IMG/VR virus record: IMGVR_UViG_3300023199_000204
Location: 1 to 64,000 of that record
Strand: one strand, 5' to 3'
DNA length: 64,000 bases
Numbering within the stretch: the first letter of the stretch is position 1; each line of letters opens with the position of its first letter. Of the stretch, positions 11,791-49,094 are shown one piece after another. Under the pieces are notes generated by a model that was given only the letters and a program-made list of their open reading frames with translations, did not search any database and was not told the origin of the DNA. A program made the position numbers and the translations under genes.

Positions 11791-12822
11791 ATGTCTTTAT
11801 TTAGTACACATGGAAAGGGAGGCGAGCTTAATGTTGGTTCAACTCGCGATGCCCTTCAACAAATTGTAAAATATGCAACTATTTTAGAAGATTTGCAGCC
11901 AGCAAATACTGCTTTGGCTCAGAGACCCTCATTTTCTGATCAACAGAGAGATGAGCTAGTAAAAAGAGCACTTTTAACCACAGAGGGCAAAATTGCTTTA
12001 GGTCAGGCAATGGCTAACCCCATTAGAAAGAACCTTGATTATCAAGGGGTAGGAAGAAGAGTTCTTGTTGTAGACCCGTTACCACAGGGAGCACTCCCAG
12101 TTTACGAGCGTGACATTGATGTTGCTGCTACTGTTGTTTCAAGCAATGGTTCAGCACCTGAGAGTCGCGTATTCGGTGACAGGGTAACTATTCCTGAGTT
12201 TGAAGTTGTTTCAAACCCGACAGTAAGAATTGCTGAAGTTCGCAGACGTAGATTCAACGTCATTGACCGTGCCCAGCAGAAAGCTCGCCAAGAAATCCAG
12301 GCTCAAGAGGATGCCAACATCTTCTCAGCTCTTGATTTCGCAGCTGACTCAACTCTTGGTGGTGAAAACACTGCTCAGGACATTGCGGACGCTGGTCTTC
12401 TAAAGCGCGACCTTTCTGAAATTAAGGTTCAGGTTGATCGTTGGGACCTTGTAACCACAAAATTCCTTATGAATATCGTTGAATACAATGATATCCTAAA
12501 CTGGGCAACTGGTGGCGGACAAGGAACTGGTGGTGGCGAGGTTGATCCTGTCACTATGCGTGAAATCCTACAGACTGGTCTTTATGCCCATCTTTGGGGT
12601 GCTGACATCATCGTTTCAAAGGTTGTTCCTCAGGGAACTGTCTTCGGTGTTGCCGATCCTGAGTTTATTGGTGTAATGCCTGTAAGACAGGATATTGAAG
12701 TACTTCCTGCAGACGAGCCTAAACAGTTAAAACTTGGCTGGGTAGTAAACGAAATTATTGGTGTTGGCATTGTCAACTCCCGTGGTTGTGCTGTTGGTCG
12801 TAAATCAGTAGCTGTTGGCTAA
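11791..12822 (+). CDS. Major capsid protein (HK97-like fold)
   Basis: 343 aa; PIRKNLDYQGVGRR.LVVDPLPQG.LP.Y, A.QEIQAQED..IF, G.YAHLWGADIIVS..VP.G and LGWVVNE.IG motifs typical of large-phage capsid proteins; strongly biased codons; followed by a terminator. Confidence 0.85.
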   Translation: MSLFSTHGKGGELNVGSTRDALQQIVKYATILEDLQPANTALAQRPSFSDQQRDELVKRALLTTEGKIALGQAMANPIRKNLDYQGVGRRVLVVDPLPQGALPVYERDIDVAATVVSSNGSAPESRVFGDRVTIPEFEVVSNPTVRIAEVRRRRFNVIDRAQQKARQEIQAQEDANIFSALDFAADSTLGGENTAQDIADAGLLKRDLSEIKVQVDRWDLVTTKFLMNIVEYNDILNWATGGGQGTGGGEVDPVTMREILQTGLYAHLWGADIIVSKVVPQGTVFGVADPEFIGVMPVRQDIEVLPADEPKQLKLGWVVNEIIGVGIVNSRGCAVGRKSVAVG

Positions 12823-15837: not shown

Positions 15838-18351
15838 GTGAGAAAAAAAACAACGGCTGAGTTTATAAGCGATGCGATAAAAGTTCATAAAGGTAAATAT
15901 GATTATAGTAAAACAAATTATATTTCATGTAAAAATAAAGTGGAAATAATTTGCTCTATTCACGGAGAGTTTTTTCAAACAGCGAGCGACCATCTATCAG
16001 GGCATGGTTGTAAAAAATGTAAATTCGATAAATTAAATAAATTAAGAAAGGTAAATTTAAAAGAATTTCTTGAAAGAGCAAGAAAATCTCATAACAATTT
16101 TTATGATTATTCTCTAATAGAGAAAATATATGATTGTAATAATGATAAGTTAAAAATTATATGTCCCATACACAGAATATTTTATCAAACGGCATCTTCA
16201 CATATGTCAGGAATAGGATGTAAAGAATGCTATTATGATAATGTTAGAAAAAATCCTCCAAATCCTACTATTACTTTTGATGAATTTTTAGAAAGAGCAA
16301 AAAAGATATTTAGAAATAAATATAAGTATAAAAACTATGAAAATATTTCTTCAAAAATAACAATAATTTGTCCTATACATGGAGAATATGAGCAATTACC
16401 ATATAGTCATTTAAAAAGTAAAGGATGTGTTAAATGTAGAGGAACTGTAAATAATCTTAAAGTATTTATTAGCAAGGCAAATAATATACATAATTTTAGA
16501 TATGATTATAGCAAATCAGCTTATTCTGGAAATGAAGAGTTAATAACAATAATTTGCCCTATACATGGTGAATTTGAACAGATAGCGAGAACTCATTTAA
16601 GTGGCTCAGGATGTAGATTTTGTTATGGAAAACGTAAAAAAACTACTAAAAAATTTATAAAAGAAGTAATGGAAGTTCATGGGAACAAATATGATTACAG
16701 TAAAGTAGATTATCAAAATTGGAAAACAAAAGTTAAAATAATATGCCCTACTCACGGAGAATTTTTCCAAAGGGCTCGACTTCATCTAAAAGGAGCTAAT
16801 TGTCCCAGATGTGCTAATTCTTTTAGAAAGACTACCAAAGAGTTTGTTAAAGAAGTAATGGAAGTTCATGGAAATACATATAATTATAGTAAAACAAAAT
16901 ATATAAATTCTTATACTAAAATAATAATTATATGTTCTACTCACGGAGAATTTAAACAGAACCCAAGAGTTCATTTAAGGGGATCAGGTTGTAGAATTTG
17001 TAATTTATTTAAGGTTTCTAAAATATCTCAAGATTGGCTTGATAATTTCAAAGGAATAGAAAAAGAGGTTCCTATTACCGTTGGTAAAAATAGATTTATA
17101 GTTGATGGATTTAATAAAAATACAAATACTATATATGAGTTTGATGGAGACTTTTGGCATGGAAATCCAGATGTTTTTAACCTTAATGATAAAAATAAAA
17201 CTGCCAAAATGACTTTTAAAAAGCTTAATGAAAAGACATTAAGAAAAAGAAATGTCTTAATTAATGCTGGTTATAATCTTTTATATATATGGGAAAATGA
17301 TTGGAATAAAATTAAAGGAAGTAAAATGGAAAAATATAATAACGCAATTGAAGTGGATGGAAATAAATTAACAAAAAAATATATAGAGAGTTTAGATGAC
17401 AAACAAAGAGAAAAATTAATAGCCCCTATTTTTCATTATTTTAGAATTAATGGCTTTCAATATCCCGATGATGAGAATAAAATAAAAAAAGATTATAAAA
17501 GGCTTAAAGAAAAAGAATTTGATAAAAATATTACTGAATTATATAATAACGCAAGTTTAGCTACTTATATTTGTAAATATTTTTGTAAAAGTTTTTATAA
17601 AACTACAAGTAGAGGAAAACCACATATGATTGATGTTTTTAATGATGATAAATTATTAAGAAAAGTTATTAAAAATAGATTGGGTTTAAATTGGTATAAA
17701 CAAAAAGGAGAAGATGATGTAGAGGCTTTTACGATTTCATTTAAGCAAATAATCCAAGGAATTCGTTCTAGTAGGCTAGTTCCTATGATTTCTATGTTTA
17801 AGCCTAGCATCGCAAAGTTCATATATCAAAAATATAGTAATTATGGAGATACTATTCTAGATTACTCTGCTGGTTTTGGCGGAAGAATGCTTGGTGCTTC
17901 TGTTTTAGATAGAAGATATATCGGAATAGATCCACTAACTTCTTTTGAAATTAATGATATTATCAAATATCTTCAAATTGAAAACTGTTATTTAATAAAA
18001 GGCATTTCTGAAGAAATATATTTAAAGCATAATTCCATAGATCTATCTTTTTCAAGCCCTCCTTACTATGATCTTGAATATTATTCTAACGATAATACTC
18101 AGGCATATAATAAAGGTGAGAATTATTTTTATAATGTATATTGGAGAAAAACATTAGAAAACTCCTATAAAATGCTTAAAAAGGGAAAAATTTTCGCTGT
18201 AAATGTAAAAGACCAGCCAAAAATGGTTGAAATGGCTGGTGATTTTTTCACATATAAGGAAAAAATTGGCTTGAGAACCATAAGATCTCATCTGAACAAA
18301 AAAAATATAGATCCTACCAAATATGAATATATCTACATATTCGAAAAATAA
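15838..18351 (+). CDS. Fusion of DUF723-like repeats and a Vsr/DUF559-like nuclease with an amino (N4C/N6A) DNA methyltransferase
   Basis: Six YDYS..ICPxHGEF.Q...H..G.GC repeats; YEFDGDFWHG and IWENDW; then ILDYSAGFGGR (motif I) and SPPYY (motif IV). Internal AAGGA RBS plus in-frame ATG at 17326. Confidence 0.8.
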   Translation: MRKKTTAEFISDAIKVHKGKYDYSKTNYISCKNKVEIICSIHGEFFQTASDHLSGHGCKKCKFDKLNKLRKVNLKEFLERARKSHNNFYDYSLIEKIYDCNNDKLKIICPIHRIFYQTASSHMSGIGCKECYYDNVRKNPPNPTITFDEFLERAKKIFRNKYKYKNYENISSKITIICPIHGEYEQLPYSHLKSKGCVKCRGTVNNLKVFISKANNIHNFRYDYSKSAYSGNEELITIICPIHGEFEQIARTHLSGSGCRFCYGKRKKTTKKFIKEVMEVHGNKYDYSKVDYQNWKTKVKIICPTHGEFFQRARLHLKGANCPRCANSFRKTTKEFVKEVMEVHGNTYNYSKTKYINSYTKIIIICSTHGEFKQNPRVHLRGSGCRICNLFKVSKISQDWLDNFKGIEKEVPITVGKNRFIVDGFNKNTNTIYEFDGDFWHGNPDVFNLNDKNKTAKMTFKKLNEKTLRKRNVLINAGYNLLYIWENDWNKIKGSKMEKYNNAIEVDGNKLTKKYIESLDDKQREKLIAPIFHYFRINGFQYPDDENKIKKDYKRLKEKEFDKNITELYNNASLATYICKYFCKSFYKTTSRGKPHMIDVFNDDKLLRKVIKNRLGLNWYKQKGEDDVEAFTISFKQIIQGIRSSRLVPMISMFKPSIAKFIYQKYSNYGDTILDYSAGFGGRMLGASVLDRRYIGIDPLTSFEINDIIKYLQIENCYLIKGISEEIYLKHNSIDLSFSSPPYYDLEYYSNDNTQAYNKGENYFYNVYWRKTLENSYKMLKKGKIFAVNVKDQPKMVEMAGDFFTYKEKIGLRTIRSHLNKKNIDPTKYEYIYIFEK

Positions 18352-18457: not shown

Positions 18458-19019
18458 ATGTCTAAAAAGATTAAAAACCTTATTATGTTGGCGGACTCTC
18501 TTGATAAAGAAGGGAAGTTTGCTGATGCTGATTATATTGATAATTTAATTCACTCCTTTGCGGCAAAAAGTCCGCCAAAAAAAATATAAACAAACTGGGG
18601 CAAAAAATAAAAGTGATTATGCTGACCCAAAAAATTATAAATATCCCATACATACGGAGAAGAATGTAAGGTCTGCTCTATCATATTTTAGTCAGTCCAA
18701 AAATTACAATAAATATTCTCCAAGTGAGAGAGGCTCTATTTGGTCAAAAATCAAACGAGCAGCTAAAAAGTATAATATTAAACTCGATCCAAAGAACGAT
18801 CCTCCTTGGGGCAAAAAGTCTAAAACAGCAAAATTAAACCAAGAGATGGTAGATTTATTAGCTGGCTCTGGGCTTTGTATTAATGGACAAGACACATTTA
18901 ATAAATATTTAGATTTCTTAAATACACTAGATGATAATGAATTATCTGTTTTTAAATTCAGACTACAGCCATTTTCTGGCTCTAGTAGTGGGGAATCATA
19001 TGATACAAGCCTCAACTAA
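18458..19019 (+). pseudogene. LA..LD..G module fused to a DUF6582-like domain, split by +1 at A8 (18577-18584)
   Basis: ATG 18458 with GGAGG RBS reads MSKKIKNLIMLADSLDKEGKFADADYIDNLI..SPPKK. Removing one A joins it to YKQTG..YADPKNYKYPIHTEKNVRSALSYF..IKRAAKKYNI. Confidence 0.65.
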
Positions 19020-19026
19020 TCAAAAT

Positions 19027-19047
19027 CTATCAATATTTGGGTATTTT
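19027..19047 (+). promoter_or_regulatory. Candidate late promoter CTATCAAT-N7-TATTTT
   Basis: Recurrent motif upstream of 19081. Confidence 0.6.
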
Positions 19048-19080
19048 TAATAGCAGTATATTAATATAGGAGCCTTTTAA

Positions 19081-19368
19081 ATGAGTAGATGGGATTATTT
19101 TAACGAAATTACAGTAACAGAAACGAGCTTTCCTAGTTCTGCTCAAGTTGATTTTAATTTTCACACGGTTGGATTTAATTTAATAAATCAAGGGTCTGAA
19201 ATTATTGAATATTCTTTTGATGGGACCAATGTTCATGGTCAATTAGATGCTTCTGGAGATACAGTAGAGGCTGATTTTATCAGCAGAATAGTAAATAAAA
19301 TATGGTTCCGCGTGTCTTCTGGGATTTCTCAAGTTAGAGTCGAAGGATGGGGGAGTTCAGGAGGATGA
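19081..19368 (+). CDS. Small virion protein, single ~90-aa beta anchor domain
   Basis: W.YF..ITV.ETSFP..GF.L.N.G..IEYSFDG.NVHG..NKIWF..VEGWG; four copies in this locus. Confidence 0.55.
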   Translation: MSRWDYFNEITVTETSFPSSAQVDFNFHTVGFNLINQGSEIIEYSFDGTNVHGQLDASGDTVEADFISRIVNKIWFRVSSGISQVRVEGWGSSGG

Positions 19369-19371
19369 TTA

Positions 19372-21648
19372 ATGTCTAAATGGGACCATTATAGTGTAAT
19401 CGAAGTAACAGACGCAAGTTTTCCTTCCATTCCGCAAGTTTCTTTTAAATTTAATTCAAAAGGATTTAAGCTTGTTAATATTGGCGAGACAGAAGTTGTT
19501 TATTCTTTCGATGGGACAAATGTTCATGGAAAATTAAATCCTAATGATAATTCAGTAATACGAGAATTTCCTGACAGAATCGTTAATAAAATTTGGTTTA
19601 TAAGTTCTTCTTCTGGATATGTTAGAATTTCTGGCTGGGGGGCTGGTGGGGTAATATCTCAAGGAATTGGGTCTTCTTCTGGTGAAGACAGTAGCTCAAG
19701 CGATAATATTATAGAAGTACCTTTATTTGATGTAAATTATTCTTTGGAAAACGGAGTTGACTATTTAAATCCAGTATTAACTATCAACGGCATAACCGAG
19801 ACGCCTGTATTTAGATACAAGGGTGGCGATGCTTCGGCCAGTGGTTTGCCCGCATGGGGCTATGGACCCGATTTGGATTTTGCTTCTGCTGGTGATGACC
19901 CTACCTATAACGACGGTTCCCCTTTGCTTGGCGCCAATGACGATAGCGTTAAGTTCAACAATGGTGATTTTTTCCGCTATGACGCTTCGACAACATTCGC
20001 GGATATAACCTCCGAAGATATTGTGATGGAAATGGTGGTCGTTAGGGGAGGCTTGGGCGGTATATTTTCAAAGCGTGATAGCTCCAATCATGGCTGGGTT
20101 ATTCAGGACGAAACAAACGATATTCGCCTTCTATTAAGTGACCCCGACGGTGATAACGTTTCCATCATTACGAACGCGCTAGCGGCTGGCCAGTGGATAC
20201 ACCTAATGTTTTTTGTGGACCGTAGCAACGTTATTGGTGGAGCGGTTTATATTAATGGTACGAACGAGACACTTACTATTATTGGCTCTATCACAGACAT
20301 AGGTACGCTCGTAACATCGGCGAATCTTGCCGTAGGCGCTTTGCGTTTCGACGGTGTGCTAAAATCTCTCGCCAATGTCGCCTACGTCGCCATGTGGAAA
20401 CGCGACGCTTGGCTCGATACTCACCTACAAGCGGCGGTAGCAAAAGAACGCTTTGCGAAACTAACGGGTGTATGGCCCCAAAGGGCCACGGGTACAAAAG
20501 TTCCAACGGTAATGACCAGAACTACCACGGCCTATTCTGAAAAGATTGAAGCCGATGGAACAAGAAGGCTTTACTACGTAGGAATGAATTGGCCGCGCGT
20601 GGTTTCAAGGCCCGATGCTAACGGAGATATAGTAACGGGATACTTGGCGGAGCCTGCAACGACTAACCTTATTGGCTACAGCGAATATTTTAATAATTGG
20701 TCAAAGGGTAACTGTACCATAAGCAGCGATGCTCTAGTAGGGCCTACGGGACAAAGTACAGCGGATGAACTACACGAATCAGGTTCGTTTACAAGTAGCA
20801 ATGCAGCGGTGGGCAGAACAGCAAGTTTAACGGATGGAACGACATACACATTTTCTTGCTGGGTTAAAGCAGCTGGTAGAAGTTGGGTGCGCCTTGCAGC
20901 AATATCGGCTCCAACGGCTACGGCATACTTTGACGTAACAAACGGGATTGTTGGCACAACAAGCGGCACCACCGCTGCAGGAATGGAGTCTTGGGGGGAC
21001 GGCTGGTATCGATGCTGGATTACATATGCCGCTACAGGTACGGCAGGAAGAGTACATAATATCGTTCCAGCCGAGGACGACAACGATCCTGTGTACGATA
21101 GTCTTGATGACCACTCGCTTTCACTTTACGGCGCCCAAGTGGTAGCAGGTGCTGTCCCTTCTAGCTACATCATTACAGTCTCGTCGGCAGTCGCCACGCG
21201 TACCGCCGATAACCTTTACTACAAGGGCGATGACGGGAACATTAATGCGGATGGGAAGGGTTCTGTATACGTCGAAGCTTTGCCCCCTGTGTCTACGGCT
21301 GGAACACATTTGGTAAATCTCAACGATGGAGGTAGCGCTAGCGACCGTATCTTTACGATTATCGATAGTTCTGGTTTCTTTGCCGCCGATAGTCGCGCAA
21401 GTGGGGGCAACGATGGCGTAGTAGACTCGACAATCAACGCGCTTGACGGTGTATCTCACTCGGTAATGGTGAAGTGGAAAGCGAATTCACTGCAATTGTT
21501 TGTTGATGGAACATCGGAGGGCACTGTCGACACGTCGGTGGATATCCCCGATGACCTTGATCGCATAGCAATTGGTGAGGCAGAAGCAGGTGCTGTACGG
21601 CTTGACGGCATAGTCCAACGCGTGAAAATCAACAAGGATGATTCATAA
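19372..21648 (+). CDS. Head/tail fibre: anchor domain, LamG/concanavalin-like domains and a spike-fibre carbohydrate-binding-like domain
   Basis: N-terminus matches the 19081 domain; WIHLMF..AVYING (LamG-like); EPATTNL, GDGWYRCWIT and YGAQV...PSSYI...TRTAD motifs; GC-rich body. Confidence 0.65.
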   Translation: MSKWDHYSVIEVTDASFPSIPQVSFKFNSKGFKLVNIGETEVVYSFDGTNVHGKLNPNDNSVIREFPDRIVNKIWFISSSSGYVRISGWGAGGVISQGIGSSSGEDSSSSDNIIEVPLFDVNYSLENGVDYLNPVLTINGITETPVFRYKGGDASASGLPAWGYGPDLDFASAGDDPTYNDGSPLLGANDDSVKFNNGDFFRYDASTTFADITSEDIVMEMVVVRGGLGGIFSKRDSSNHGWVIQDETNDIRLLLSDPDGDNVSIITNALAAGQWIHLMFFVDRSNVIGGAVYINGTNETLTIIGSITDIGTLVTSANLAVGALRFDGVLKSLANVAYVAMWKRDAWLDTHLQAAVAKERFAKLTGVWPQRATGTKVPTVMTRTTTAYSEKIEADGTRRLYYVGMNWPRVVSRPDANGDIVTGYLAEPATTNLIGYSEYFNNWSKGNCTISSDALVGPTGQSTADELHESGSFTSSNAAVGRTASLTDGTTYTFSCWVKAAGRSWVRLAAISAPTATAYFDVTNGIVGTTSGTTAAGMESWGDGWYRCWITYAATGTAGRVHNIVPAEDDNDPVYDSLDDHSLSLYGAQVVAGAVPSSYIITVSSAVATRTADNLYYKGDDGNINADGKGSVYVEALPPVSTAGTHLVNLNDGGSASDRIFTIIDSSGFFAADSRASGGNDGVVDSTINALDGVSHSVMVKWKANSLQLFVDGTSEGTVDTSVDIPDDLDRIAIGEAEAGAVRLDGIVQRVKINKDDS

Positions 21649-22217
21649 TGAGTACAAAATGGAACTACTTTGAAAAAATAACAGTTTCAGAAACTTCTTT
21701 TCCAACAAATCCTCAAACTACTTTTGAGTTTCACGGACAAGGAGTTGTATTTTATAATGAAGGTGGCGTTGATGTAGAGTATTCACTTGATGGAGTTAAT
21801 ATTCACGGCATTGTGCCCGCTACAACTAAACTACAATTTAACTACAGAAATGTAAATAAGATATGGTTTCAAACCGCTTCTGGCTCTCCTGTCATAAGAG
21901 TTGAAGGATGGGCGGATACGGAAGCAACTCAAAAGGGTGATTTTTTCAATGATGTAGAAATCAATTCAAATATCTTCCCAGAGTCCCCTCAAGTTGTTTT
22001 TGGATTTATAACCCGAGGGTTTAAGCTAAAAAACACAGGGGCTTCAATTATTGAATATTCTTTTGATGGAAGTAATCTAGGCGGAACATTGAATCCTGCT
22101 GATAATACCATTGAAAGATTTTTTGAAGATAGAATGGCAACAAAAATTTGGTTTAGAAGCCCTGTTAGTTCAGGAACCGTAGAGACAGAGGGCTGGGGCA
22201 ATTCAAGAATTCAATAA
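21648..22217 (+). CDS. Virion protein with two tandem anchor domains
   Basis: Two copies of the 19081 domain (EYSLDG..KIWF..EGW; EYSFDG..KIWF..EGWG). Confidence 0.55.
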   Translation: MSTKWNYFEKITVSETSFPTNPQTTFEFHGQGVVFYNEGGVDVEYSLDGVNIHGIVPATTKLQFNYRNVNKIWFQTASGSPVIRVEGWADTEATQKGDFFNDVEINSNIFPESPQVVFGFITRGFKLKNTGASIIEYSFDGSNLGGTLNPADNTIERFFEDRMATKIWFRSPVSSGTVETEGWGNSRIQ

Positions 22218-22252
22218 TAAAAATTGCTAAAATACTTATGGAGTAAATAAAA

Positions 22253-22576
22253 ATGTTTAAAAGGGTAGGGGATTTGAAAATAGACATAGATGAAAAAACT
22301 ATGGAAGAGGTTCAGGAAAAAACTCTTGAATTAATGGAATTAATAAAAGAACAATCAAAAACTGTAGATGGTGGTTCTATTGTTAAGGCTTCTGATGGTA
22401 CAACTTACAAAGTAGGTGGGCATTATTTTCCCGAAGAGGAAGTTGATCAGGATAAAGATTCTGATGAGTTAGGAAGCAACAATCGCCCTAAAATATTTGG
22501 TAGTATAAAAAGTAAAAATCAAAATACCAACGGTTATGTTATAACTACTTGGACAAGGAGTGTTGATGAAAGATGA
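22253..22576 (+). CDS. Hypothetical protein
   Basis: ORF with GGAG RBS, in operon. Confidence 0.6.
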   Translation: MFKRVGDLKIDIDEKTMEEVQEKTLELMELIKEQSKTVDGGSIVKASDGTTYKVGGHYFPEEEVDQDKDSDELGSNNRPKIFGSIKSKNQNTNGYVITTWTRSVDER

Positions 22577-23089: not shown

Positions 23090-24421
23090 GTGAAAAAGAA
23101 ATATTTGAGCGAATATGATAAAATAAATTGTTGGGATTATGATAAAAACAAAAATTTAGATCCTAGTAAATTAACTTACGGGAGCCATAAGTTAGCGTGG
23201 TGGAAATGTAATAAATGTGACCAATCTTATAAAAAATCTATTAAAGAACAATTAAAACACAAATTATGTCCGTTTTGTTCTAATAAAAAAGTATATGAAG
23301 GCAATTGCCTTTTAAATTTATATCCAGAAATATCAAAAGAGTGGGATTATAATAAAAATGATTTAAAACCAAATAATGTAGTTTCTGGAAGTAATAGAAA
23401 AGTATGGTGGAAGTGTAGTAAATGTAATCAAGAGTGGGAAGCACCTATTTTTAAAAGAACTCTTTATAATTATGGATGCCCATACTGTTCAAATAGAAAA
23501 GTCTCTAAAAAAAATTGCTTATCTAGCACTAACCCAGAATTATTAAAAGAGTGGTGGTATGAAAAAAATATTATTAAGCCACATAATATAACAGCAGGCA
23601 GTGGAAAAAAAGTTTGGTGGAAGTGCTTAAATTGTAAAGAAAAATATAAAATAATTATACATAGAAAAGTAAGCGGAAGAGGTTGCCCATATTGCATAAA
23701 TATAAAAATTTCTAAAAAAAATTGTTTATCAGCAACACATCCCGAAATAGCAAGTGAATGGAATTATGATAAAAACCGTTTAACACCAGATGATGTAGTT
23801 TCAGGAAGCAACAAAAAAGTATGGTGGAAATGTAATAAGTGTAATCAAGAATGGAGCACTAAAATTCAACATAGGACATTATCTAACAGCAACTGTCCTT
23901 TTTGTAGCAACCAGAAAGTATATAATGGAAACTGTTTAGAGACTTTATATCCTGATGTAGCAAAAGAATGGAATTATAATAAAAATGATTTAACACCAAA
24001 AGATGTAGTTTATGGTAGCAATAAGAAAGTATGGTGGATATGTAAAAATAGCCACGAATGGAAAACTGATGTCTATAGTAGAACTATTAGCAAAACATTA
24101 TGTAAAAAATGTAGTAATAATGTTTCAAAGACATCTCAAAAATGGTTAAATAAAATGGAAGAAATATATGGAAAAATTGAAAGAGAATTTCCTATAAAAA
24201 CAAAAAAAAGAGTTTATAATGTTGATGGGTTTTCAAAAAAGCATAATATAATATTTTCTTACCACGGAAATTATTGGCACGGAAACCCAGAAATATATGA
24301 TTTAAATGAGTATAATAATGTAGCTAAAAAGACTTTTAGAGAGTTATATTTAGATACTTTAATTAGAGCACAATATTTAAAAGCTGAAGGGTATTGTGTT
24401 ATTGAAAAATGGGGTAAATAA
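23090..24421 (+). CDS. Zinc-ribbon-repeat (DUF4379-like) protein with a Vsr-like nuclease C-terminus
   Basis: Five EW.Y.KN..GS.KKVWWKC..C..CPxC repeats; VDGF..YHGNYWHGNP. Confidence 0.8.
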   Translation: MKKKYLSEYDKINCWDYDKNKNLDPSKLTYGSHKLAWWKCNKCDQSYKKSIKEQLKHKLCPFCSNKKVYEGNCLLNLYPEISKEWDYNKNDLKPNNVVSGSNRKVWWKCSKCNQEWEAPIFKRTLYNYGCPYCSNRKVSKKNCLSSTNPELLKEWWYEKNIIKPHNITAGSGKKVWWKCLNCKEKYKIIIHRKVSGRGCPYCINIKISKKNCLSATHPEIASEWNYDKNRLTPDDVVSGSNKKVWWKCNKCNQEWSTKIQHRTLSNSNCPFCSNQKVYNGNCLETLYPDVAKEWNYNKNDLTPKDVVYGSNKKVWWICKNSHEWKTDVYSRTISKTLCKKCSNNVSKTSQKWLNKMEEIYGKIEREFPIKTKKRVYNVDGFSKKHNIIFSYHGNYWHGNPEIYDLNEYNNVAKKTFRELYLDTLIRAQYLKAEGYCVIEKWGK

Positions 24422-24679: not shown

Positions 24680-25111
24680 ATGAAAAAACATTCATTTTTA
24701 TTAAGAAATGTAACTAAAAGAGATATAAACCTAGGAGACTTAAGATTTAAAATCCCAGCGATGGGAGTTAAAAATCTTCTTTCTCCTAAATCTCACATAA
24801 CTGTTGAAGATCTGGCGAATTCAATTTCTTCAGGCTCTTTATCAAAATATTTGGGAAAAAGTTTAATTCATATTAAAAATTTATCTCGCGTTTCTCCAAA
24901 ATATAAAACAGAGTCAAAGGTCACCACAAAGGGTCTTAAAAGGTTAAAAACATCTGTAAAAGAAAAAGCTGAAGACTTATCAAAAGAGCTTGAAGAAATG
25001 ACTTTAATGGATGATGAAGAATATTTGAGAGAACTTTCTATGGTAGATGATATTAGTAAAGGTTCAGCTCCTTTGGTGAGGAAACAAAATGAAAAAAAGA
25101 CCAAAGATTAA
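24680..25111 (+). CDS. Hypothetical protein
   Basis: ORF coupled to the csp stop. Confidence 0.6.
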   Translation: MKKHSFLLRNVTKRDINLGDLRFKIPAMGVKNLLSPKSHITVEDLANSISSGSLSKYLGKSLIHIKNLSRVSPKYKTESKVTTKGLKRLKTSVKEKAEDLSKELEEMTLMDDEEYLRELSMVDDISKGSAPLVRKQNEKKTKD

Positions 25112-25400
25112 ATGTGAAATCTGCGGAAATGATAATAAAAGAATACTTCATAGGCATCATATAATACCGCGTCACGATCCACGTTCTACAAATTCTGATA
25201 ATAATTTAGCAATTTTGTGCCCAAATTGTCACTCTTCTGTTCATACAGGAGAGCTAATAATTATCGGAGTTTATAAAACGACCTCTGGCACAGAAGTTTT
25301 ATGGTTTAAAGAAGGGGATGAGCCACCTCTTCCAAAAAAAAATTGGAGAGTTAAAGAAAATCCATTGGTAATAACTTTAAAAAAAAAGGGAGTGAATTAG
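25089..25400 (+). CDS. Small HNH endonuclease
   Basis: CEICG..HRHHIIP..NLAILCPNCH..VH. Confidence 0.85.
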   Translation: MKKRPKIKCEICGNDNKRILHRHHIIPRHDPRSTNSDNNLAILCPNCHSSVHTGELIIIGVYKTTSGTEVLWFKEGDEPPLPKKNWRVKENPLVITLKKKGVN

Positions 25401-28172: not shown

Positions 28173-29324
28173 ATGTCAACACTTAAACTAACAATTACTG
28201 TATCAGATATAAGTGATGTAATTTCTTTATATGATAAGATACAAATTCAAAGGTCTGAATCGGGCCCACCATATTCAGATGCTGTTGATATAACATCTTC
28301 TGCTTCTACTTCCGCAACTCTTTCCAGTGAGTTAAATGGCCCATATAATATAAACGGGCAAACTTTATCTTTTAAAATAAATGGAGGCAACACTCAAACT
28401 TTAACCTTTACTTCATCAAACCCTGTTTCATCTACAGCGGCTGCTTCTGAATTTACGACATTTGCCTCTGGAGCCACAGCTTCTGGAGCACTTGGAAACT
28501 TTATTATGACAACTGCTTTGACTGGAACTGGTTCTTCTATAGAAGTAATAGGAGGAACTGCTTTAACTGAATTAGGATTTGATGCCGGAGATAAAGATAC
28601 GGGTGAAAACTCTGAAATAACTTTAGTTGCGAACACTTCAACTTATGAGTTCACTGACAGCAGTGGAAGTGAAAATTACTATTATAGAACAAGATACTAC
28701 AACTCTTCAACAGATGCTGTTAGCTGTTATTCTGATTGGATTCAAGGTGCTGACATAAGTGCTGATTTAGAAATTGGTGACGCTCCAATATACGCCTGGA
28801 CTCAAGATGAAATATGTGGAATTAATATATTGCTGAAACAGTTAAAAGCCAGACTAAAAAGTGATGGATTGGCAGAAACTATTGATGAGTATGGAAACAT
28901 AGAATTATCAAATTGTCCAATATTTACAGATGATGAATTAGTATGTTTCTTACAAAACAGTTTAAGTGAGTTTAATCAAACGCCACATTTTACTAGTTTT
29001 ACGTTTGCGGACCAGGTTATTTATGACAGATATGCTCATATTATTGTAGAAGGTGCTTTTATATTAGCAACAGGGGCACAAATGTTAATTGAAGCGGGAA
29101 GAGAGTTTACAATTACAGATAATGGAATTACTATGAATCCGCCACCATTATCTAATGTTCTAAATAATCAACTTGGACATTTTGTTACAAGGCACACACA
29201 AGCTTTAGAAAAGATTAAATGGAGTATTAAACCAAAACCAACGGGATTTGGAAGCTTCAGGGTACTTGCTTCAAATCCAAATTATCTTCGTCTACGGCAC
29301 CTAAGGCAAAGGAGAATTATATAG
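28173..29324 (+). CDS. Neck/head-tail adaptor protein with N-terminal Ig-like extension
   Basis: C-terminal FTDDEL..FL..SLSEFN.TP..IIVEGA..LIEAGREF.ITDNGI helical connector-like domain; synteny. Confidence 0.55.
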   Translation: MSTLKLTITVSDISDVISLYDKIQIQRSESGPPYSDAVDITSSASTSATLSSELNGPYNINGQTLSFKINGGNTQTLTFTSSNPVSSTAAASEFTTFASGATASGALGNFIMTTALTGTGSSIEVIGGTALTELGFDAGDKDTGENSEITLVANTSTYEFTDSSGSENYYYRTRYYNSSTDAVSCYSDWIQGADISADLEIGDAPIYAWTQDEICGINILLKQLKARLKSDGLAETIDEYGNIELSNCPIFTDDELVCFLQNSLSEFNQTPHFTSFTFADQVIYDRYAHIIVEGAFILATGAQMLIEAGREFTITDNGITMNPPPLSNVLNNQLGHFVTRHTQALEKIKWSIKPKPTGFGSFRVLASNPNYLRLRHLRQRRII

Positions 29325-34250: not shown

Positions 34251-35303
34251 ATGAAAAGAACAAGTAAAGAAATAGAAAACAAAGTAGTTGAGATGTACAA
34301 AAGTGGTTTATCTTATAGAAAAATTTCAGAAATAACTGATATTAAATTACACGTAATAAGAAAAATAGTAAAACAAAGTGATACTATTGTATCTACACCA
34401 GGATTTAAAAAAAAATATAATTATGATGAAATCATAAATATTTATAAAAATGGAAAGACAATTAAAGAAGTATCGATTGCTACTGGGGCGTCATTCTCGT
34501 GTGTAACAAATATACTAAAATCTAAAAATGTGCCGTTACGCAGGAAAGTTAATTTTAATAAAGATGATATTGTAAATTTATATTTATCTGGGCATAGTAT
34601 AAAATTTATTTCTCAAAAATTAAAATTACCTAAAACTAATATAGCACGTAGAGTAAAAAGATATGGAATAAGTAGGTCAATTTCACAGGCGAAAAGAAAT
34701 GAGCAAATTAATCATAAATGTTTCAAAGAATACAATATTAACTCTGCTTACTGGGCTGGATTTTTAGCGGCAGATGGTAGCATTAGAAAGAAAGGGGGAG
34801 TTAGACTAGCACTTCAAAAACGCGATATTGGACATCTTAAAAAATTTGGTGAATTTATTAATTATAATAAAATTAAATTATACAGTAATACCCCCGAGAT
34901 TGTTTTTGGCTCAAAAGAAATAGAAAAAGATTTAGAGTTTAACTTTAACATAATAAATAATAAAGTTTATATTTTAAATCCCCCTTCACAAATTAATAAA
35001 AATTTTATTTCTCATTTCATAAGGGGCTATTTGGACGGAGATGGGTGTATTCACAAGACAAAGTGTAAAATAAGTTTCGCTGGAACATATATGATGCTTT
35101 GTTGGATAAAAGAAAATATTAAACTATTTGTGGAAGAAGCTAAAAACCCAAGTGTTTTGCCTCAAAAGCAATCTAAATATACTTATACATTGACTTTTAA
35201 TGGTAAGATTCAATCTAGAAAAATAGTTAAGTGGTTATATGAAGGTTCTACAGAAAACACAAGGTTAGATAGAAAATACGAGATAGCAAAAAATTATATG
35301 TGA
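34251..35303 (+). CDS. LAGLIDADG homing endonuclease with three HTH repeats
   Basis: YWAGFLAADG, FIRGYLDGDG and LDRK motifs. Confidence 0.9.
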   Translation: MKRTSKEIENKVVEMYKSGLSYRKISEITDIKLHVIRKIVKQSDTIVSTPGFKKKYNYDEIINIYKNGKTIKEVSIATGASFSCVTNILKSKNVPLRRKVNFNKDDIVNLYLSGHSIKFISQKLKLPKTNIARRVKRYGISRSISQAKRNEQINHKCFKEYNINSAYWAGFLAADGSIRKKGGVRLALQKRDIGHLKKFGEFINYNKIKLYSNTPEIVFGSKEIEKDLEFNFNIINNKVYILNPPSQINKNFISHFIRGYLDGDGCIHKTKCKISFAGTYMMLCWIKENIKLFVEEAKNPSVLPQKQSKYTYTLTFNGKIQSRKIVKWLYEGSTENTRLDRKYEIAKNYM

Positions 35304-44097: not shown

Positions 44098-45090
44098 GTG
44101 ATAGAATGTAATAGATGCCGTAGAAATAGAAAACACAAAGCAAAAGGAATGTGTCTTTCTTGTTATTCTGGATCTTTATATAAAAAAATAATTTGCTCAA
44201 ATTGTAAAAATAAAAGAAGACAGTTTAGAAAAAGTTCTTCATTGTGCTCTAAATGTTTTAAACACTTATCTAAATTTAAATGTAAAAATTGTAATAGCAA
44301 AATACATTTTGAAAATGGATTTTGTAAATTTTGTTACATACCTCCAGAGAAAACTTGTAATAGTTGCTATAAAGTCGGTATTCTTAAATCTAATTTATGC
44401 TCTAAATGTTATAATAAAAAATATTATTCTAAAAATATTGGAAAATGCGAAATATGTAAAAAAGAAAAAAACATATTTAACCATAGTGGTAAATATATAT
44501 GTTCAAAATGTAATCATAGGAATATAAGAACTATATCTATTTGTAAAATATGTTCAAAAGAGAAGGTTATATATAAAGACGACAAGTGTAAATATTGTTG
44601 CGTGAAGGTTGGGAAATGTAAAAAATGTAATATAATAAGAAAATTATTTTATGATAATAAAACAGTATGTAGATTATGTTATTATCCTCCTAAAAGAGAA
44701 TGTTATTTTTGTAATAAATATGGAATAATATCAAAAATAAAAGATGGCAAATATATGTGTAATAAATGCTATAATTCTCAACCAGAAAGAATAGCTATTT
44801 TACAAAATAACAGAGCAAGTAGGGGAAATATTTCAGGAAGTGAGTGGTTATATATAATGAATTCTACAAATTGGAAATGTTTTTATTGTGAGCAAAAGTT
44901 GAACAAGAATAATAGAACTGTTGATCATATTATTCCTATAATAAAAGGCGGTTCTAATAGTATAGATAACTTAGTTCCTTCTTGTAATATATGTAATTCA
45001 AGCAAGAACGCCCAAAATGTATTTAAATGGCTTAAAATAAAAAATATTGAATTGACGGAAGAAAAATTAAAAACCCTTGGAGTTAAGTAA
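44098..45090 (+). CDS. Cys-rich HNH endonuclease
   Basis: Many CxxC pairs; CFYC..TVDHIIP..GG....NLVPSC..CN.SK. Confidence 0.85.
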   Translation: MIECNRCRRNRKHKAKGMCLSCYSGSLYKKIICSNCKNKRRQFRKSSSLCSKCFKHLSKFKCKNCNSKIHFENGFCKFCYIPPEKTCNSCYKVGILKSNLCSKCYNKKYYSKNIGKCEICKKEKNIFNHSGKYICSKCNHRNIRTISICKICSKEKVIYKDDKCKYCCVKVGKCKKCNIIRKLFYDNKTVCRLCYYPPKRECYFCNKYGIISKIKDGKYMCNKCYNSQPERIAILQNNRASRGNISGSEWLYIMNSTNWKCFYCEQKLNKNNRTVDHIIPIIKGGSNSIDNLVPSCNICNSSKNAQNVFKWLKIKNIELTEEKLKTLGVK

Positions 45091-46458: not shown

Positions 46459-46550
46459 AATGATGCTAAAAATTTTCAATAAAGTCTTGAAATCATATGT
46501 TTTAAGCTATTGTGGGCATCGTCAAATATATATATTTTGGAGGATTTCAA

Positions 46551-49094
46551 ATGCCTAATATTCCTGGAGTACAAGGTCCATTAATACCATCTGTAGTGAC
46601 GAGGGTAAGGGTAAGATCAAGGGCTCTATCAATTCCTGGGGGATTGAGAGTTTTATGTTTAGTTGGCGAAGGTCGTCGCGAGGAGGTTCTTGTAGATTCT
46701 GCTCAAGGGGGCGGTGCCGATGGATTTGTGCCAGATTTTTCTCAATTAGCCACTGATGGTTATGGAAGATTTTTCCGTCTGGCAAACACCAGCATAGTTT
46801 CAAACAGAACATCTCTTTTATTAAACGGATCAGAATTAAGACTTTTAGAAGAAGCTCTTGATGGAAACAGCTTCTCATCAAGTTATGACGCAAGAATTGA
46901 TATTTCTACAGGTCAAATAGAGCTTCAAAGTGCTTCTATTGTTGATCAGGGCGGAATATTATATTCAGAAAGCTCAGGAAACACCGGTGATGGTTATTTA
47001 TCAGCAATAAATCTTACAGATTCTAATGCTCCTGCGGAAACTTGGACAATTAGGTGTACTAGTGTTTTAAAAGACAGTTATGGTGCTCCTATAAGAGAGC
47101 AAGCTACATTTATAGCCTCAGGTTCAGTTAGCGGACAATTAGTAGACTCATATGGTCAGCCATTTACTTGGAAAAGTGATGGAGCCGCCGTAGATAATGG
47201 AATTTTGTCTTTTGCTATATATAATCCTTCTCCTAGTCAGCCTCACGATGTAGGCGACAGATACTCTATTCAGGTTTCTAGTAAGGTGTTACAGGAAAGA
47301 GATACTTTAGAAGCCAGATATATTGCTGAAGCAGATTTGCTTGATCCTCAAACATTTACAGAGCCAGAAAAACTTTATATTAAGCACGGACAGCCCGATT
47401 TGGAAAATACATTATCTTTTGCCGCGCAATTGGCTTTTGAAAATGGAGCAACAAGTGTTCTGGCTGTTCAGGCGAAACCAGCATTGCCAAGAAGAACTAG
47501 TGAAATTGTTCTTCCTGCTCAAAATTCACTAACAGGCGAAACTGGTGCTGATGGTGGTTCTGATCCAGATGATTTAATTTTTCCAATCACTGCTCCAGGA
47601 AAACCAGGAGCTGATTCAGAAGTTCATTTCTTTATTATAAATGCTGATGGGTCAGAGGACCAAATATTCCCTAATAAAGTTTCATTTTATGATCCTGATA
47701 TTACGACCGCATTTTCCACTTATGAAGATACTGGCGTAAGTGCTGATTTACTAACTGAATTTATGGCTCCAGGCTCAAGTGGAACTCCATATAGCTATAC
47801 TGTTGTAAGTGATGATAAAATTGAAGATACTGGAATTGATGGGTATATTTCACCAATTGGTGTTGGCTCAACAGCATTTTTTACAGCCTCTTCTGCCTCA
47901 TTTACAAGTGAAGCAGTAACTGATGGAAAATATATTGATGTCGTAAATACTGGAACTGCTAATCTTGGCAGATGGGAAATTACAGAGGTTGTAAGTGCCA
48001 CAACTGTAAGAATTTCAAGAGATTCTGGATTTTTTGCTACCGAAACAGATTTAAAATGGCAGCTATTACTTCCTGGAGAATCATCTTATAGAGTTTTATT
48101 TACAACTGATTTAGCTTTAGCTTCGGGCAAAGGTTTAAGAGTTAGTTATATAGATGAGAAAGATGAAGACTTTTTTGATGCTAACTGGGCAGTGGCTCTT
48201 GATACTTTAGAGACTCAAGATTTACAGATTCTTGGTCTATATCCTAGTCAAACATTTTCAGCAATTCAGCAGGCTGGTCGTGTCCACGTGGAGAGAATGT
48301 CTTCAACATTCTATAAGAGAGAGCGTGTGCTCTTCACAGGTGCTTTGGATGGTTTAACGACTGATAATGTGCTCGGCGTATCCAACGCGGCTGTAGAGAA
48401 TATAGGAATTCTTGAGGGCATTCAGGGTGATTCTGCCGAAGAGATATTAGATGGAAATATCGAAGATTTGACAGATTACAGTGTTGTAAATAGCTTTGGA
48501 GACAGCTTTAGAGTTGCGTATTTCTATCCAGATCAAGCTATTAGGGTTGTTAATGGAACAGCAACCACAATTCCAGGGTATTGGATTTCAGCCGCTGCGG
48601 CAGGAAGAATGTCAGGAGAGCCTAATATTGCTCAGCCTCTAACAAATAAGGTATTATCTGGAATAACAATTCTAAACAGTCGTCAATATAAAGAAACCGT
48701 TCTTGCTTCTCTTGGAGATGATGGAATTATTGTATGTCAGCCAGTTACAGGCGGCGTGAGAGTTATTCACGGAATTACAACTTCTCAAAGTGGAAACCCA
48801 GAAGATGAAGAACTATCAATCGTGTTCATTCGTGATCATATCGCGAGAACTATGAGAGATACATTTAGAGAGTTTATCGGGCAACCAGAAGATCCTACAC
48901 TAATTCCTTCTTTAACTGCCAAAGCAATTTCGCTACTTAATGCTTTTGTCTCTCAAAACTTGATTACTGCTTATAGAAACCTATCTGTATCCAGAGATGA
49001 TGTAGAGCCAAGACAATACAATATCGTGGTTGAAGTCCAACCTAACTATCCAGTTAACTGGATATTCTGTGATGTGAGCGTAGGACTCTTTTAA
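46551..49094 (+). CDS. Contractile tail sheath protein
   Basis: Start at ATG 46551 (GGAGG). H...MS....ER, AAA.AG......PLTNK, GITT....ELS...IRD and PNYPVNWI...V sheath C-terminal motifs. Confidence 0.9.
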   Translation: MPNIPGVQGPLIPSVVTRVRVRSRALSIPGGLRVLCLVGEGRREEVLVDSAQGGGADGFVPDFSQLATDGYGRFFRLANTSIVSNRTSLLLNGSELRLLEEALDGNSFSSSYDARIDISTGQIELQSASIVDQGGILYSESSGNTGDGYLSAINLTDSNAPAETWTIRCTSVLKDSYGAPIREQATFIASGSVSGQLVDSYGQPFTWKSDGAAVDNGILSFAIYNPSPSQPHDVGDRYSIQVSSKVLQERDTLEARYIAEADLLDPQTFTEPEKLYIKHGQPDLENTLSFAAQLAFENGATSVLAVQAKPALPRRTSEIVLPAQNSLTGETGADGGSDPDDLIFPITAPGKPGADSEVHFFIINADGSEDQIFPNKVSFYDPDITTAFSTYEDTGVSADLLTEFMAPGSSGTPYSYTVVSDDKIEDTGIDGYISPIGVGSTAFFTASSASFTSEAVTDGKYIDVVNTGTANLGRWEITEVVSATTVRISRDSGFFATETDLKWQLLLPGESSYRVLFTTDLALASGKGLRVSYIDEKDEDFFDANWAVALDTLETQDLQILGLYPSQTFSAIQQAGRVHVERMSSTFYKRERVLFTGALDGLTTDNVLGVSNAAVENIGILEGIQGDSAEEILDGNIEDLTDYSVVNSFGDSFRVAYFYPDQAIRVVNGTATTIPGYWISAAAAGRMSGEPNIAQPLTNKVLSGITILNSRQYKETVLASLGDDGIIVCQPVTGGVRVIHGITTSQSGNPEDEELSIVFIRDHIARTMRDTFREFIGQPEDPTLIPSLTAKAISLLNAFVSQNLITAYRNLSVSRDDVEPRQYNIVVEVQPNYPVNWIFCDVSVGLF

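What the first reader, a model, noticed from the sequence alone, without database searches (positions are those of the whole stretch)
19081..22217. Repeated ~90-aa anchor domain with a recently acquired GC-rich fibre cargo
Four copies of one domain occur as a single (19081), a tandem pair (21648) and the N-terminus of a 758-aa fibre. After a Ser-rich linker, the fibre DNA switches abruptly at about 19780 to much higher GC with many CG-containing codons, and returns to AT-rich at the stop (~21645). The foreign part has no DGY. This points to a plug-in display system in which a virion-docking domain is fused to exchangeable adhesin modules from another genome.
Basis: partly seen in the sequence, partly recalled or inferred. 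Interest (0 to 1): 0.6.

Follow-up and report, generated by a model that had tools for sequence, protein, structure and literature searches.

The report
Phage adhesin with swapped foreign cargo
An uncultured giant phage carries four copies of a small, previously undescribed beta-sandwich "docking" domain next to its capsid gene, and one copy is fused to a sugar-binding adhesin whose outer 620 residues were recently swapped in from a GC-richer phage; this is a new example of the known habit of phages to exchange receptor-binding modules.

Summary
There are exactly four copies of a ~92-aa domain (45-53% identical) in three adjacent genes: 19081-19368, the N-terminus of 19372-21648, and a tandem pair in 21648-22217. 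Third-codon-position GC jumps from 0.21 to 0.47 at nt 19783 and falls back at the stop codon. Contigs from a second sample cross both junctions without a difference, so this is not an assembly chimera.

The domain is a confidently modelled small jelly-roll with no Pfam or PHROG family. A profile search finds 375 representatives. Among the best 150, 115 stand alone and 32 sit N-terminally before a Gly/Ser linker and varied fibre-like cargos.

Relatives of this phage (capsid protein 69-78% identical) keep the anchor gene at the same capsid-proximal position. They carry other cargos (1106, 819 and 630 aa) or none, and those cargos have native composition.

The cargo here is a near-complete copy of a ~650-aa lectin-like tail-adhesin family of small phages. 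The composition switch falls 21 codons inside that family's conserved N-terminal box. This points to cassette replacement by homologous recombination in an existing fusion.

Where the anchor docks is inferred, not shown; I lean towards the capsid (head fibre). This is a new variant of a known kind.

The parts
19081..19368 (+). Gene 1: stand-alone anchor domain (95 aa), a small 8-stranded jelly-roll
   Evidence: ORF. AF2 with a 79-sequence alignment gives pLDDT 94.6 and pTM 0.85. No Pfam or PHROG hit. It is the profile-family member P0001. Relatives have a stand-alone anchor gene at the same position.
19372..19647 (+). Anchor domain at the N-terminus (residues 1-92) of the 758-aa gene 19372-21648
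   Evidence: 53% identical to gene 1. HMM envelope residues 1-92. Native composition, GC3 0.20.
19648..19719 (+). Ser/Gly-rich flexible linker (residues 93-116)
   Evidence: Read from the sequence. In the AF2 model, residues 80-112 have pLDDT below 50. GC3 5/24, native. Other fused family members have equivalent Gly/Ser linkers.
19720..19782 (+). First 21 codons (residues 117-137) of homology to the cargo family, still in native AT-rich codons
   Evidence: A profile of 42 stand-alone homologues aligns its positions 13-647 of 653 to residues 117-755. GC3 is 3/21, P=0.002 under the island's GC3 of 0.467. Over the 11 confidently aligned codons alone, P=0.05.
19783..21648 (+). GC-rich foreign segment: residues 138-758 of the adhesin, up to and including the stop codon
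   Evidence: GC3 changepoints and CpG excess. phrog_5939 'tail protein' 1e-36 over residues 379-751, and Pfam Laminin_G_3 6.7e-11. Full-length homologues at 35-43% identity. AF2 pLDDT mostly above 90.
20638..21213 (+). Central carbohydrate-binding-module-like domain (residues 423-614) inside the cargo
   Evidence: Matches the RcGTA head spike fibre Rcc01080 (PDB 6tb9), residues 78-274, E 3.3e-18. Weak CBM_4_9 hit. It is the part shared with many phage tail-fibre proteins. It occurs four times in tandem in a 775-aa protein of the relative L028.
21304..21630 (+). C-terminal Laminin_G_3 (concanavalin-A-like lectin) domain, residues 645-753
   Evidence: Pfam PF13385, E 6.7e-11, above the gathering score. 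Foldseek matches laminin and neurexin LG domains and the Pa193 and E217 baseplate entries (9b45, 8env).
21648..22217 (+). Gene 3: two anchor domains in tandem (189 aa; domains at about residues 1-91 and 89-186)
   Evidence: It is the only tandem among the 150 best family representatives. Its start overlaps the stop of the adhesin gene by one base.
11791..12822 (+). Context: major capsid protein gene, 6.3 kb upstream. Two homing-endonuclease insertions account for about half of the gap.
   Evidence: phrog_2522 'major head protein' 5e-76. 69-78% identical in the relatives L027, L028 and L029, where the anchor genes lie 0.1-4.4 kb from it.

Best explanation
The three genes at 19081-22217 encode a surface-display set of an uncultured giant myovirus-like phage (316 kb or more).

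The repeated ~92-aa unit is a small jelly-roll domain of an undescribed phage family. Its role is to hold a cargo on the particle. In the family it occurs either alone or at the N-terminus, joined by a flexible Gly/Ser linker to varied adhesin or fibre modules.

In this phage lineage the domain was duplicated in place to four copies: one alone, one carrying the adhesin, two in tandem. I infer that these co-assemble, as a mixed oligomer or on equivalent sites, so that only some positions carry the adhesin.

The locus lies beside the major capsid gene in this phage and its relatives. The fold is closest to vertex and turret proteins of other viruses. The adhesin shares a sugar-binding domain with the head-spike fibre of the Rhodobacter gene transfer agent. 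For these reasons the most likely docking site is the capsid, giving a head fibre for first, reversible binding to host surface polysaccharide. A tail location is the main alternative.

The adhesin (residues 117-755) is a near-complete copy of a ~650-aa lectin-like protein that small sipho- and Mu-like phages encode at the end of their tail modules. From residue 138 to the stop codon its DNA keeps the codon usage of a roughly 48-55% GC genome. The 21 codons before that are homologous to the same family but use native AT-rich codons. So an existing anchor-adhesin fusion most likely had its distal 620 residues replaced by homologous recombination. One crossover was in the family's conserved N-terminal box and the other at the gene end. 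This would change host-binding specificity.

Shown: the copies, the family and its architectures, the composition switch, synteny with different cargos in relatives, and the homologies.
Inferred: docking on the virion, capsid rather than tail, co-assembly of the paralogues, sugar binding, and the recombination route.
For: Copies and genes.

Family. No Pfam or PHROG match. The word search found only one other protein. The profile search found 375 representatives at E<=1e-3. Among the best 150, 115 stand alone and 32 are N-terminal fusions. The cargos fall into 10 groups and all are linked through Gly/Ser-rich stretches. The ESM Atlas places the family in viruses only.

In-lineage duplication. 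The four domains form one group in the family tree (SH-aLRT 88).

Relatives. G001 and G002 (capsid protein 71-86% identical, sheath 46-50%) have one anchor gene each between the capsid and sheath genes. L027 (capsid protein 71%) has a stand-alone anchor followed by an anchor fused to 1106 aa, in full synteny with the window. L029 (62-78% over the two capsid-gene pieces) has a stand-alone anchor followed by an anchor fused to 819 aa. L028 (69%) has an anchor fused to 630 aa, followed by a protein with four copies of the sugar-binding-like domain, next to the capsid gene. Their cargos have native GC3: 0.14, 0.37 and 0.20, against 0.09, 0.30 and 0.14 in their anchors.

Foreign composition. In 12 other loci of the cargo family, gene GC stays within 0.05 of flank GC; here it is 0.18 higher.

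Cargo identity. It matches RcGTA Rcc01080 at E 3e-18, and the RcGTA head spike is a pentamer of jelly-roll base proteins plus one flexible capsule-binding fibre (PMC7296036).

Breakpoint inside the conserved box.

Not a chimera.
Against: - No direct evidence places the anchor on any part of the virion. No cultured phage among 50,697 GenBank records has it, so there are no proteomic or structural data.
- The RcGTA base protein itself was not among the listed matches.
- In more distant phages the anchor gene lies among tail-fibre genes or just before lysis genes, and the cargo family is a tail protein elsewhere. A tail site therefore stays plausible.
- The complex prediction for the three proteins gave no verdict.
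- The argument for a crossover inside the cargo family rests on 21 codons. Only the last 11 are aligned with high confidence, and for those P=0.05.
- No close donor is known; the best identity is 43%.
Confidence: 0.6

Rival explanations
1. Same modular anchor-plus-cargo system, but the anchor docks on the tail or baseplate, so the 758-aa protein is a conventional tail receptor-binding protein with an N-terminal attachment domain.
For: The cargo family sits at the distal end of tail modules in sipho- and Mu-like phages and matches phrog_5939 'tail protein'. It resembles the tail-fibre/baseplate protein of phages Pa193 and E217. In distant phages the anchor gene follows tail-fibre or tail proteins (L009, L010, L030).
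Against: In this phage and five relatives the locus is capsid-proximal: 0.1-17 kb from the capsid gene, and 20-26 kb from the sheath gene where that gene is in view. The cargo's central domain also occurs in a proven head fibre. The fold neighbours are capsid vertex and turret proteins.
Confidence: 0.27
2. The small domain is not structural. It is an assembly chaperone or folding partner for fibres, sometimes fused to its client.
For: These are small proteins encoded next to fibre genes. Nothing here shows presence in virions.
Against: The fusion is always N-terminal, through a flexible linker, to at least 10 unrelated cargo types. That is the pattern of attachment modules, whereas known intramolecular fibre chaperones are C-terminal (general knowledge). 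Stand-alone copies exist in genomes without an adjacent fused fibre. The fold resembles capsid-surface oligomers.
Confidence: 0.08
3. The GC-rich stretch is not foreign. It reflects amino-acid composition, expression-linked codon bias or an assembly chimera.
For: Structural genes of this genome are somewhat GC-richer than average; the capsid gene has GC 0.45 and GC3 0.31.
Against: The shift is at synonymous sites (GC3 0.47 against a genome median of 0.21) and comes with a CpG excess. The borders are sharp and one lies inside the reading frame. The same protein family is AT-rich in AT-rich genomes. Cargos of relatives have native composition. Independent contigs from a second sample cross both borders.
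Confidence: 0.04

Closest known systems
Head spike of the Rhodobacter capsulatus gene transfer agent (base Rcc01079 plus fibre Rcc01080; PDB 6TB9/6TBA; PMC7296036)
   Same: Both combine a small jelly-roll base unit with a flexible, probably monomeric adhesin. The adhesin's central domain here is homologous to Rcc01080 residues 78-274 (E 3e-18). In RcGTA the fibre gives first, reversible binding to capsule polysaccharide.
   Different: In RcGTA the fibre is a separate protein held by an N-terminal Ile/Leu-Gly repeat peptide in a homopentamer of base proteins. Here the adhesin is covalently fused to a base-like domain, and there are four paralogous domains. No sequence or listed structural match to Rcc01079 was obtained. 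The location on the capsid is not shown here.
Modular receptor-binding proteins with a conserved N-terminal anchor and horizontally exchanged C-terminal parts (T7 gp17-type and Klebsiella/Ackermannviridae tailspike anchors; T-even and P2 tail-fibre mosaics). Cited from general knowledge.
   Same: A conserved N-terminal attachment module, divergent distal modules among relatives, and exchange by recombination at conserved motifs.
   Different: The anchor here is a different, undescribed jelly-roll domain. It also exists as stand-alone and tandem paralogues beside the fused copy. The locus is next to the capsid gene, not in the tail module.
Penton, turret and cement jelly-roll proteins: HCIV-1 and SH1 VP9, STIV A223, PM2 P1, HFTV1 turret, KHP40 cement
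Distal tail adhesins of sipho- and Mu-like phages: phrog_5939, ~650 aa, Laminin_G_3 at the C-terminus
   Same: The cargo (residues 117-755) aligns to positions 13-647 of 653 of this family's profile at 35-43% identity.
   Different: Those proteins have no jelly-roll anchor, and no anchor gene lies nearby in 12 loci. They lie in tail modules and share their genome's composition.

Membership tests
Undescribed phage jelly-roll 'anchor' family (defined here by the profile of alignments A1 and A3) | Significant match of about 90 residues to the family profile, with the near-invariant Ser, Gly, Gly and Trp positions | tested here: met
   All four window domains match (E 1e-24 to 1e-62 among themselves; domain E 2e-27 to 6e-35 against the A3 profile). 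375 representatives at E<=1e-3. The near-invariant S45, G48, G53 and W90 are kept in all four.
Modular anchored receptor-binding proteins (conserved N-terminal anchor, exchangeable distal part) | Relatives share the N-terminal module but differ in the distal module | tested here: met
   G000, L027, L028 and L029 (capsid protein 69-78% identical) carry 758-, 1106-, 630- and 819-aa proteins with the same anchor and cargos from at least three unrelated groups.
Modular anchored receptor-binding proteins | The N-terminal module attaches the protein to the virion | not testable with these tools
   No cultured member exists. The complex prediction gave no verdict.
RcGTA-type head spike | Fibre with the Rcc01080-type oligosaccharide-binding domain | tested here: met
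   phmmer against PDB sequences: 6tb9_F3, E 3.3e-18, query residues 423-614 to chain residues 78-274.
RcGTA-type head spike | Base protein homologous to Rcc01079 | tested here: inconclusive
   The anchor is a small jelly-roll, as Rcc01079 is described to be. No PDB sequence hit was found with the family profile, and Rcc01079 is not among the listed rows of three structure searches. A direct superposition could not be run.
RcGTA-type head spike | Separate fibre bound through an N-terminal (Ile/Leu)-Gly repeat peptide to a base homopentamer | tested here: not met
   The adhesin begins with the jelly-roll domain itself and is fused to it covalently. The arrangement is therefore different.
RcGTA-type head spike | Location on capsid vertices | not testable with these tools
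   There is only indirect support: the locus lies beside the capsid gene in six related records.
Pfam PF13385 Laminin_G_3 / PHROG 5939 tail protein (for the cargo) | Score above the family threshold | tested here: met
   Laminin_G_3 scores 43 bits against a cut-off of 27.6. phrog_5939 E 1e-36, residues 379-751 to profile positions 371-745 of 801.
Horizontally acquired segment (compositional island) | Synonymous-site composition differs sharply from the genome, while the same gene family matches its genome elsewhere | tested here: met
   GC3 0.47 against 0.21, with changepoints at 19783 and about 21669. Control of 12 loci.

The most novel reading that the evidence does not exclude
The four paralogous jelly-roll domains (one alone, two in tandem, one bearing the adhesin) build a mixed ring on the capsid's five-fold vertices, for example two tandem proteins plus one adhesin-bearing subunit. 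Each vertex would then carry exactly one covalently attached, exchangeable adhesin. This would be a genetically encoded solution to the fibre/vertex symmetry mismatch that RcGTA solves with a repeat peptide. It would also define a new, widespread family of head-fibre bases in uncultured giant phages.
Probability: 0.15. Interest if true: 0.7.

Novelty: new variant of a known kind. Interest (0 to 1): 0.5.

Why it matters
The work defines a phage domain family of several hundred sequence clusters that no database names, and gives it a testable role as the fixed half of an exchangeable adhesin.

It also catches one exchange in the act. The borders can be read to within a few codons, and one of them lies in a conserved box. 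That is direct sequence evidence for how host-binding modules move between unrelated phages: here from small sipho- or Mu-like phages of about 50% GC into a 32% GC giant phage.

If the capsid location holds, head fibres with swappable adhesins would be a common feature of a group of uncultured giant phages. The anchor would also be a natural scaffold for displaying foreign domains on phage particles.

Tried and rejected
- DNA search of 19000-22300 against 50,697 GenBank phage records: no match.
- tblastn against the same records: the tandem protein and a typical stand-alone member found nothing. A fused member matched one uncultured phage record, and only through its C-terminal cargo. The family is therefore absent from these records at this sensitivity.
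This is why the exhaustive profile search was used.
The four-copy alignment worked instead.
- Complex prediction of tandem + single + adhesin residues 1-105: score 0.03, 'no answer'. It counts neither for nor against binding.
- I asked whether the ~90-110-aa genes flanking cargo homologues in small phages are hidden anchors. No anchor-profile hit (E<=1) was found in any of the 12 cargo-family loci with DNA. The idea is rejected for those loci. It stays untested for the loci, which came without DNA.
- I looked for a second cargo copy in the genome that could have served as a recombination partner: none.
- PHROG and Pfam scans of the neighbours of distant anchor genes gave little: a tail-fibre N-terminus, a 'tail protein' and a CHAP lysin.
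- The BFVD structure search returned only uncharacterised small phage proteins.
- An Atlas lead to the PRD1 P5 spike N-terminal domain scored 0.79, below the level the tool calls meaningful, and was not pursued.
- Assembly chimera and codon-bias explanations were considered and rejected.
Full report
**Setting.** The window is the first 64 kb of a 316,473-bp linear virus record with 32.3% GC. Almost all genes are on the + strand. The record encodes a tail sheath at 46512-49094 and a major capsid protein at 11791-12822 (phrog_2522, E 5e-76). It also holds many homing-endonuclease genes. It is an uncultured giant myovirus-like phage and has no DNA-level relative among GenBank phages.

Three adjacent, tightly spaced genes encode 95, 758 and 189 aa: 19081-19368, 19372-21648 and 21648-22217. 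A search of the whole record with the first protein finds exactly four places:
- the protein itself;
- the first ~93 residues of the 758-aa protein (53% identity, E 3e-29);
- both halves of the 189-aa protein (49% and 46%, E about 1e-24).

The four-way alignment has 22 invariant columns. After the second copy comes a Ser/Gly-rich stretch (residues 93-116), which AlphaFold leaves disordered.

The composition then changes. GC3 is 0.16-0.24 in the anchors, the linker and other genes of the window, but 0.465 in 19780-21645. CpG observed/expected is 1.22 there, against about 0.5-0.7 in other long genes of the window. A two-changepoint likelihood fit places the borders at nt 19783 (2-lnL interval 19741-19795) and about 21669 (21634-21684). 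The latter coincides with the stop codon at 21646-21648. Among 195 non-nested ORFs of 150 aa or more, this gene has the highest GC3 outside one other GC-rich island far outside the window.

The junctions are real. In a second sample of the same study, separately assembled contigs span 19205-20075 and 20634-21806 without a single difference, and a third sample holds fragments of both parts. Because all samples come from one study, this counts as support against chimerism, not as independent occurrence.

**What the repeated domain is.** It matches nothing in Pfam or PHROGs, whether as a single sequence or as 79 family members scanned one by one. The word-based search found one relative only, so I used the exhaustive profile search. 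That search returned 375 cluster representatives at E<=1e-3 and 93 at E<=1e-10.

Among the best 150:
- 115 are stand-alone proteins of about 90-135 aa;
- 32 have the domain at the N-terminus of a longer protein (204-1106 aa);
- only the window's 189-aa protein is a tandem.

In the fused proteins the domain is followed by a Gly/Ser-rich stretch. The cargos fall into 10 groups by all-against-all BLAST. The largest group consists of repeat-rich fibre-like sequences. Some cargos match PHROGs annotated as virion structural proteins or Pfam Laminin_G_3. The ESM Atlas assigns the nearest clusters to viruses only, all unnamed.

With a 79-sequence alignment, AlphaFold gives a very confident 8-stranded jelly-roll (pLDDT 94.6, pTM 0.85). 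The best solved neighbours are:
- Bacillus Ena pilins;
- the STIV turret protein A223;
- nucleoplasmin pentamers;
- the PM2 spike protein P1;
- the KHP40 cement protein;
- the HFTV1 turret.

**What relatives show.** Six other records have a capsid protein 69-86% identical to the window's: G001 (L014), G002 (L006), L027, L028 and L029. Where the sheath is in view it is 46-50% identical. All carry the anchor in the capsid-proximal block.

- **L027** is collinear with the window. Its order is a 218-aa protein, the capsid protein, an acyltransferase-like protein, a methyltransferase, a stand-alone anchor (101 aa), an anchor fused to a 1106-aa fibre, and then the cold-shock protein and the homologue of window gene 28173-29324.
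- **L029** has a stand-alone anchor followed by an anchor fused to an 819-aa Laminin_G_3 protein.
- **L028** has an anchor fused to 630 aa. This is followed by a 775-aa protein made of four repeats of the same sugar-binding-like domain as window residues 428-621, directly upstream of the capsid gene.
- **G001 and G002** have one stand-alone anchor each, next to separate fibre-like genes.

So the anchor is conserved and the cargo is not. In the relatives the cargo's GC3 is close to the anchor's (0.14/0.09, 0.20/0.14 and 0.37/0.30), unlike 0.47/0.20 here.

A family tree (quick search, few columns) groups the four window domains together (SH-aLRT 88). It places the fused anchors in one large clade and at least four small clades. 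This means the four copies arose, or were homogenised, within this lineage, and that fusion to cargos happened several times. Adjacent pairs of anchor-bearing genes recur in L027, L029 and the unrelated L030. This hints that paralogues work together. The one complex prediction I could run gave no answer.

**What the cargo is.** Residues 379-751 match phrog_5939 'tail protein' (1e-36) and residues 645-753 match Laminin_G_3. Seventy database proteins match residues 135-758. About 40 of them are 630-690 aa long and align over 99% of the region at 31-43% identity.

A profile of 42 such proteins aligns its positions 13-647 of 653 to residues 117-755. The cargo is therefore a whole member of this family minus about 12 residues.

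Where context is known, these homologues are the last large gene of tail modules: after the tape-measure and distal tail genes and before the lysin, or after Mu-type baseplate genes. None of 12 loci with DNA has an anchor domain nearby, and the window's own genome has no second copy.

AlphaFold models residues 113-758 as a compact, confident (pLDDT mostly above 90) chain of beta-sandwich domains. Foldseek relates them to laminin and neurexin LG domains, to chains of the baseplate/tail-fibre structures of phages Pa193 and E217, and at fold level to lectin-like receptor-binding domains of other proteins.

The central domain (residues 423-614) matches the head spike fibre Rcc01080 of the Rhodobacter gene transfer agent (E 3.3e-18). 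In that particle, a pentamer of small jelly-roll base proteins on each capsid vertex holds one flexible fibre that binds capsule polysaccharide (PMC7296036).

**How the cargo got there.** In 12 other loci of the family, gene GC lies within 0.05 of flank GC, over a range from 0.36 to 0.60. Here the gene segment is 0.18 above its surroundings. The family is thus not intrinsically GC-rich, and the segment keeps the signature of a genome of roughly 48-55% GC.

The switch does not coincide with the domain border. Homology to the cargo family starts at residue 117 (nt 19720), but codons 117-137 have GC3 3/21. This is native-like, with P=0.002 under the island's composition. For the 11 codons aligned with high posterior probability, P=0.05. 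The next 21 codons have GC3 11/21. Residue 138 lies in the most conserved block of the family.

The simplest reading is that this phage already had an anchor-adhesin fusion of the same family. A homologous gene from a GC-richer phage then replaced everything from the conserved box to the stop codon. A de novo fusion whose crossover happened to fall there cannot be excluded. Timing is relative only, because no homologue is more than 43% identical. Homing-endonuclease genes flank the locus (15838-18351 and 23090-24421) and could have promoted exchange, but this is speculation.

**Where it sits on the particle.** This is the weakest step.

For the capsid:
- the locus adjoins the capsid gene in six related records and is 20-26 kb from the sheath where that gene is in view;
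- the fold neighbours are vertex, turret and cement proteins;
- there is the RcGTA precedent with a homologous adhesin domain.

For the tail:
- the cargo family is a tail protein elsewhere;
- distant anchor genes lie among tail-fibre genes.

I put about 0.55-0.6 on the capsid, given that the system is structural.

**Comparison and novelty.** Conserved N-terminal anchors with exchanged distal receptor-binding parts, and head fibres as first-contact adhesins (RcGTA, phi29, phiCbK, 7-7-1; PMC12796354), are both established ideas.

What is new here:
- the anchor family itself;
- its occurrence as stand-alone, tandem and fused paralogues in one operon;
- its capsid-proximal position in a group of uncultured giant phages;
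- a cleanly delimited, compositionally visible cassette swap from small-phage tail adhesins.

I rate it a new variant of a known kind, of moderate interest.

Noticed in passing
G000:C1:158,700-167,500 (outside the window; L005:4800-13500): A second and much larger GC-rich island (GC 0.45-0.72 in a 32% GC genome). It has only short ORFs, among them a DUF7227 protein (1e-37) and a nucleotidyltransferase-like protein, plus three tRNA genes. No rRNA or other Rfam family was found. It looks like another foreign insertion or a partly decayed one.
   Followed up: partly
window:15838-18351: An 837-aa fusion. The N-terminal ~495 residues are six zinc-ribbon repeats plus an endonuclease (phrog_681/559). 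They are joined to a C-terminal DNA methyltransferase that stands alone (~340 aa) at the same position in the relatives L027, L029 and L006. A homing-endonuclease module seems to have fused to a resident gene.
   Followed up: partly
window:12883-13899, 23090-24421, 25089-25400, 34251-35303, 44098-45090: Unusually dense homing-endonuclease load in the structural region: LAGLIDADG_2 with HNH repeats right after the capsid gene, a protein with five DUF4379 zinc fingers, a small HNH, a LAGLIDADG_3/HTH protein and another HNH.
   Followed up: no
G002:C1:89221-92467 and L029:3199-5261: The capsid gene of two relatives is split into three and two pieces respectively, with a LAGLIDADG gene between the pieces in L029. 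This suggests introns or inteins in the major capsid gene. The window's own capsid gene is intact, with a LAGLIDADG gene just downstream.
   Followed up: no
L028:11921-14248: A 775-aa protein made of four tandem copies of the sugar-binding-like domain shared with the window's cargo and RcGTA Rcc01080. It is encoded between an anchor-fibre gene and the capsid gene of a relative.
   Followed up: partly
L030:9162-11656: An unrelated phage carries two adjacent genes (273 and 551 aa) that both start with the anchor domain but have different cargos. They lie after a run of large fibre or baseplate-like genes, one with a Peptidase_S74 chaperone domain.
   Followed up: partly
window:18558-19019: A DUF6582 protein (E 3e-17) is encoded directly upstream of the first anchor gene. 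It has no counterpart at that position in L027 or L029.
   Followed up: no
whole record G000: CheckV completeness is given as 18% for a 316-kb record, while a 336-kb relative is rated 78%. Either the estimate is unreliable for this group or the genome is much larger than the record.
   Followed up: no
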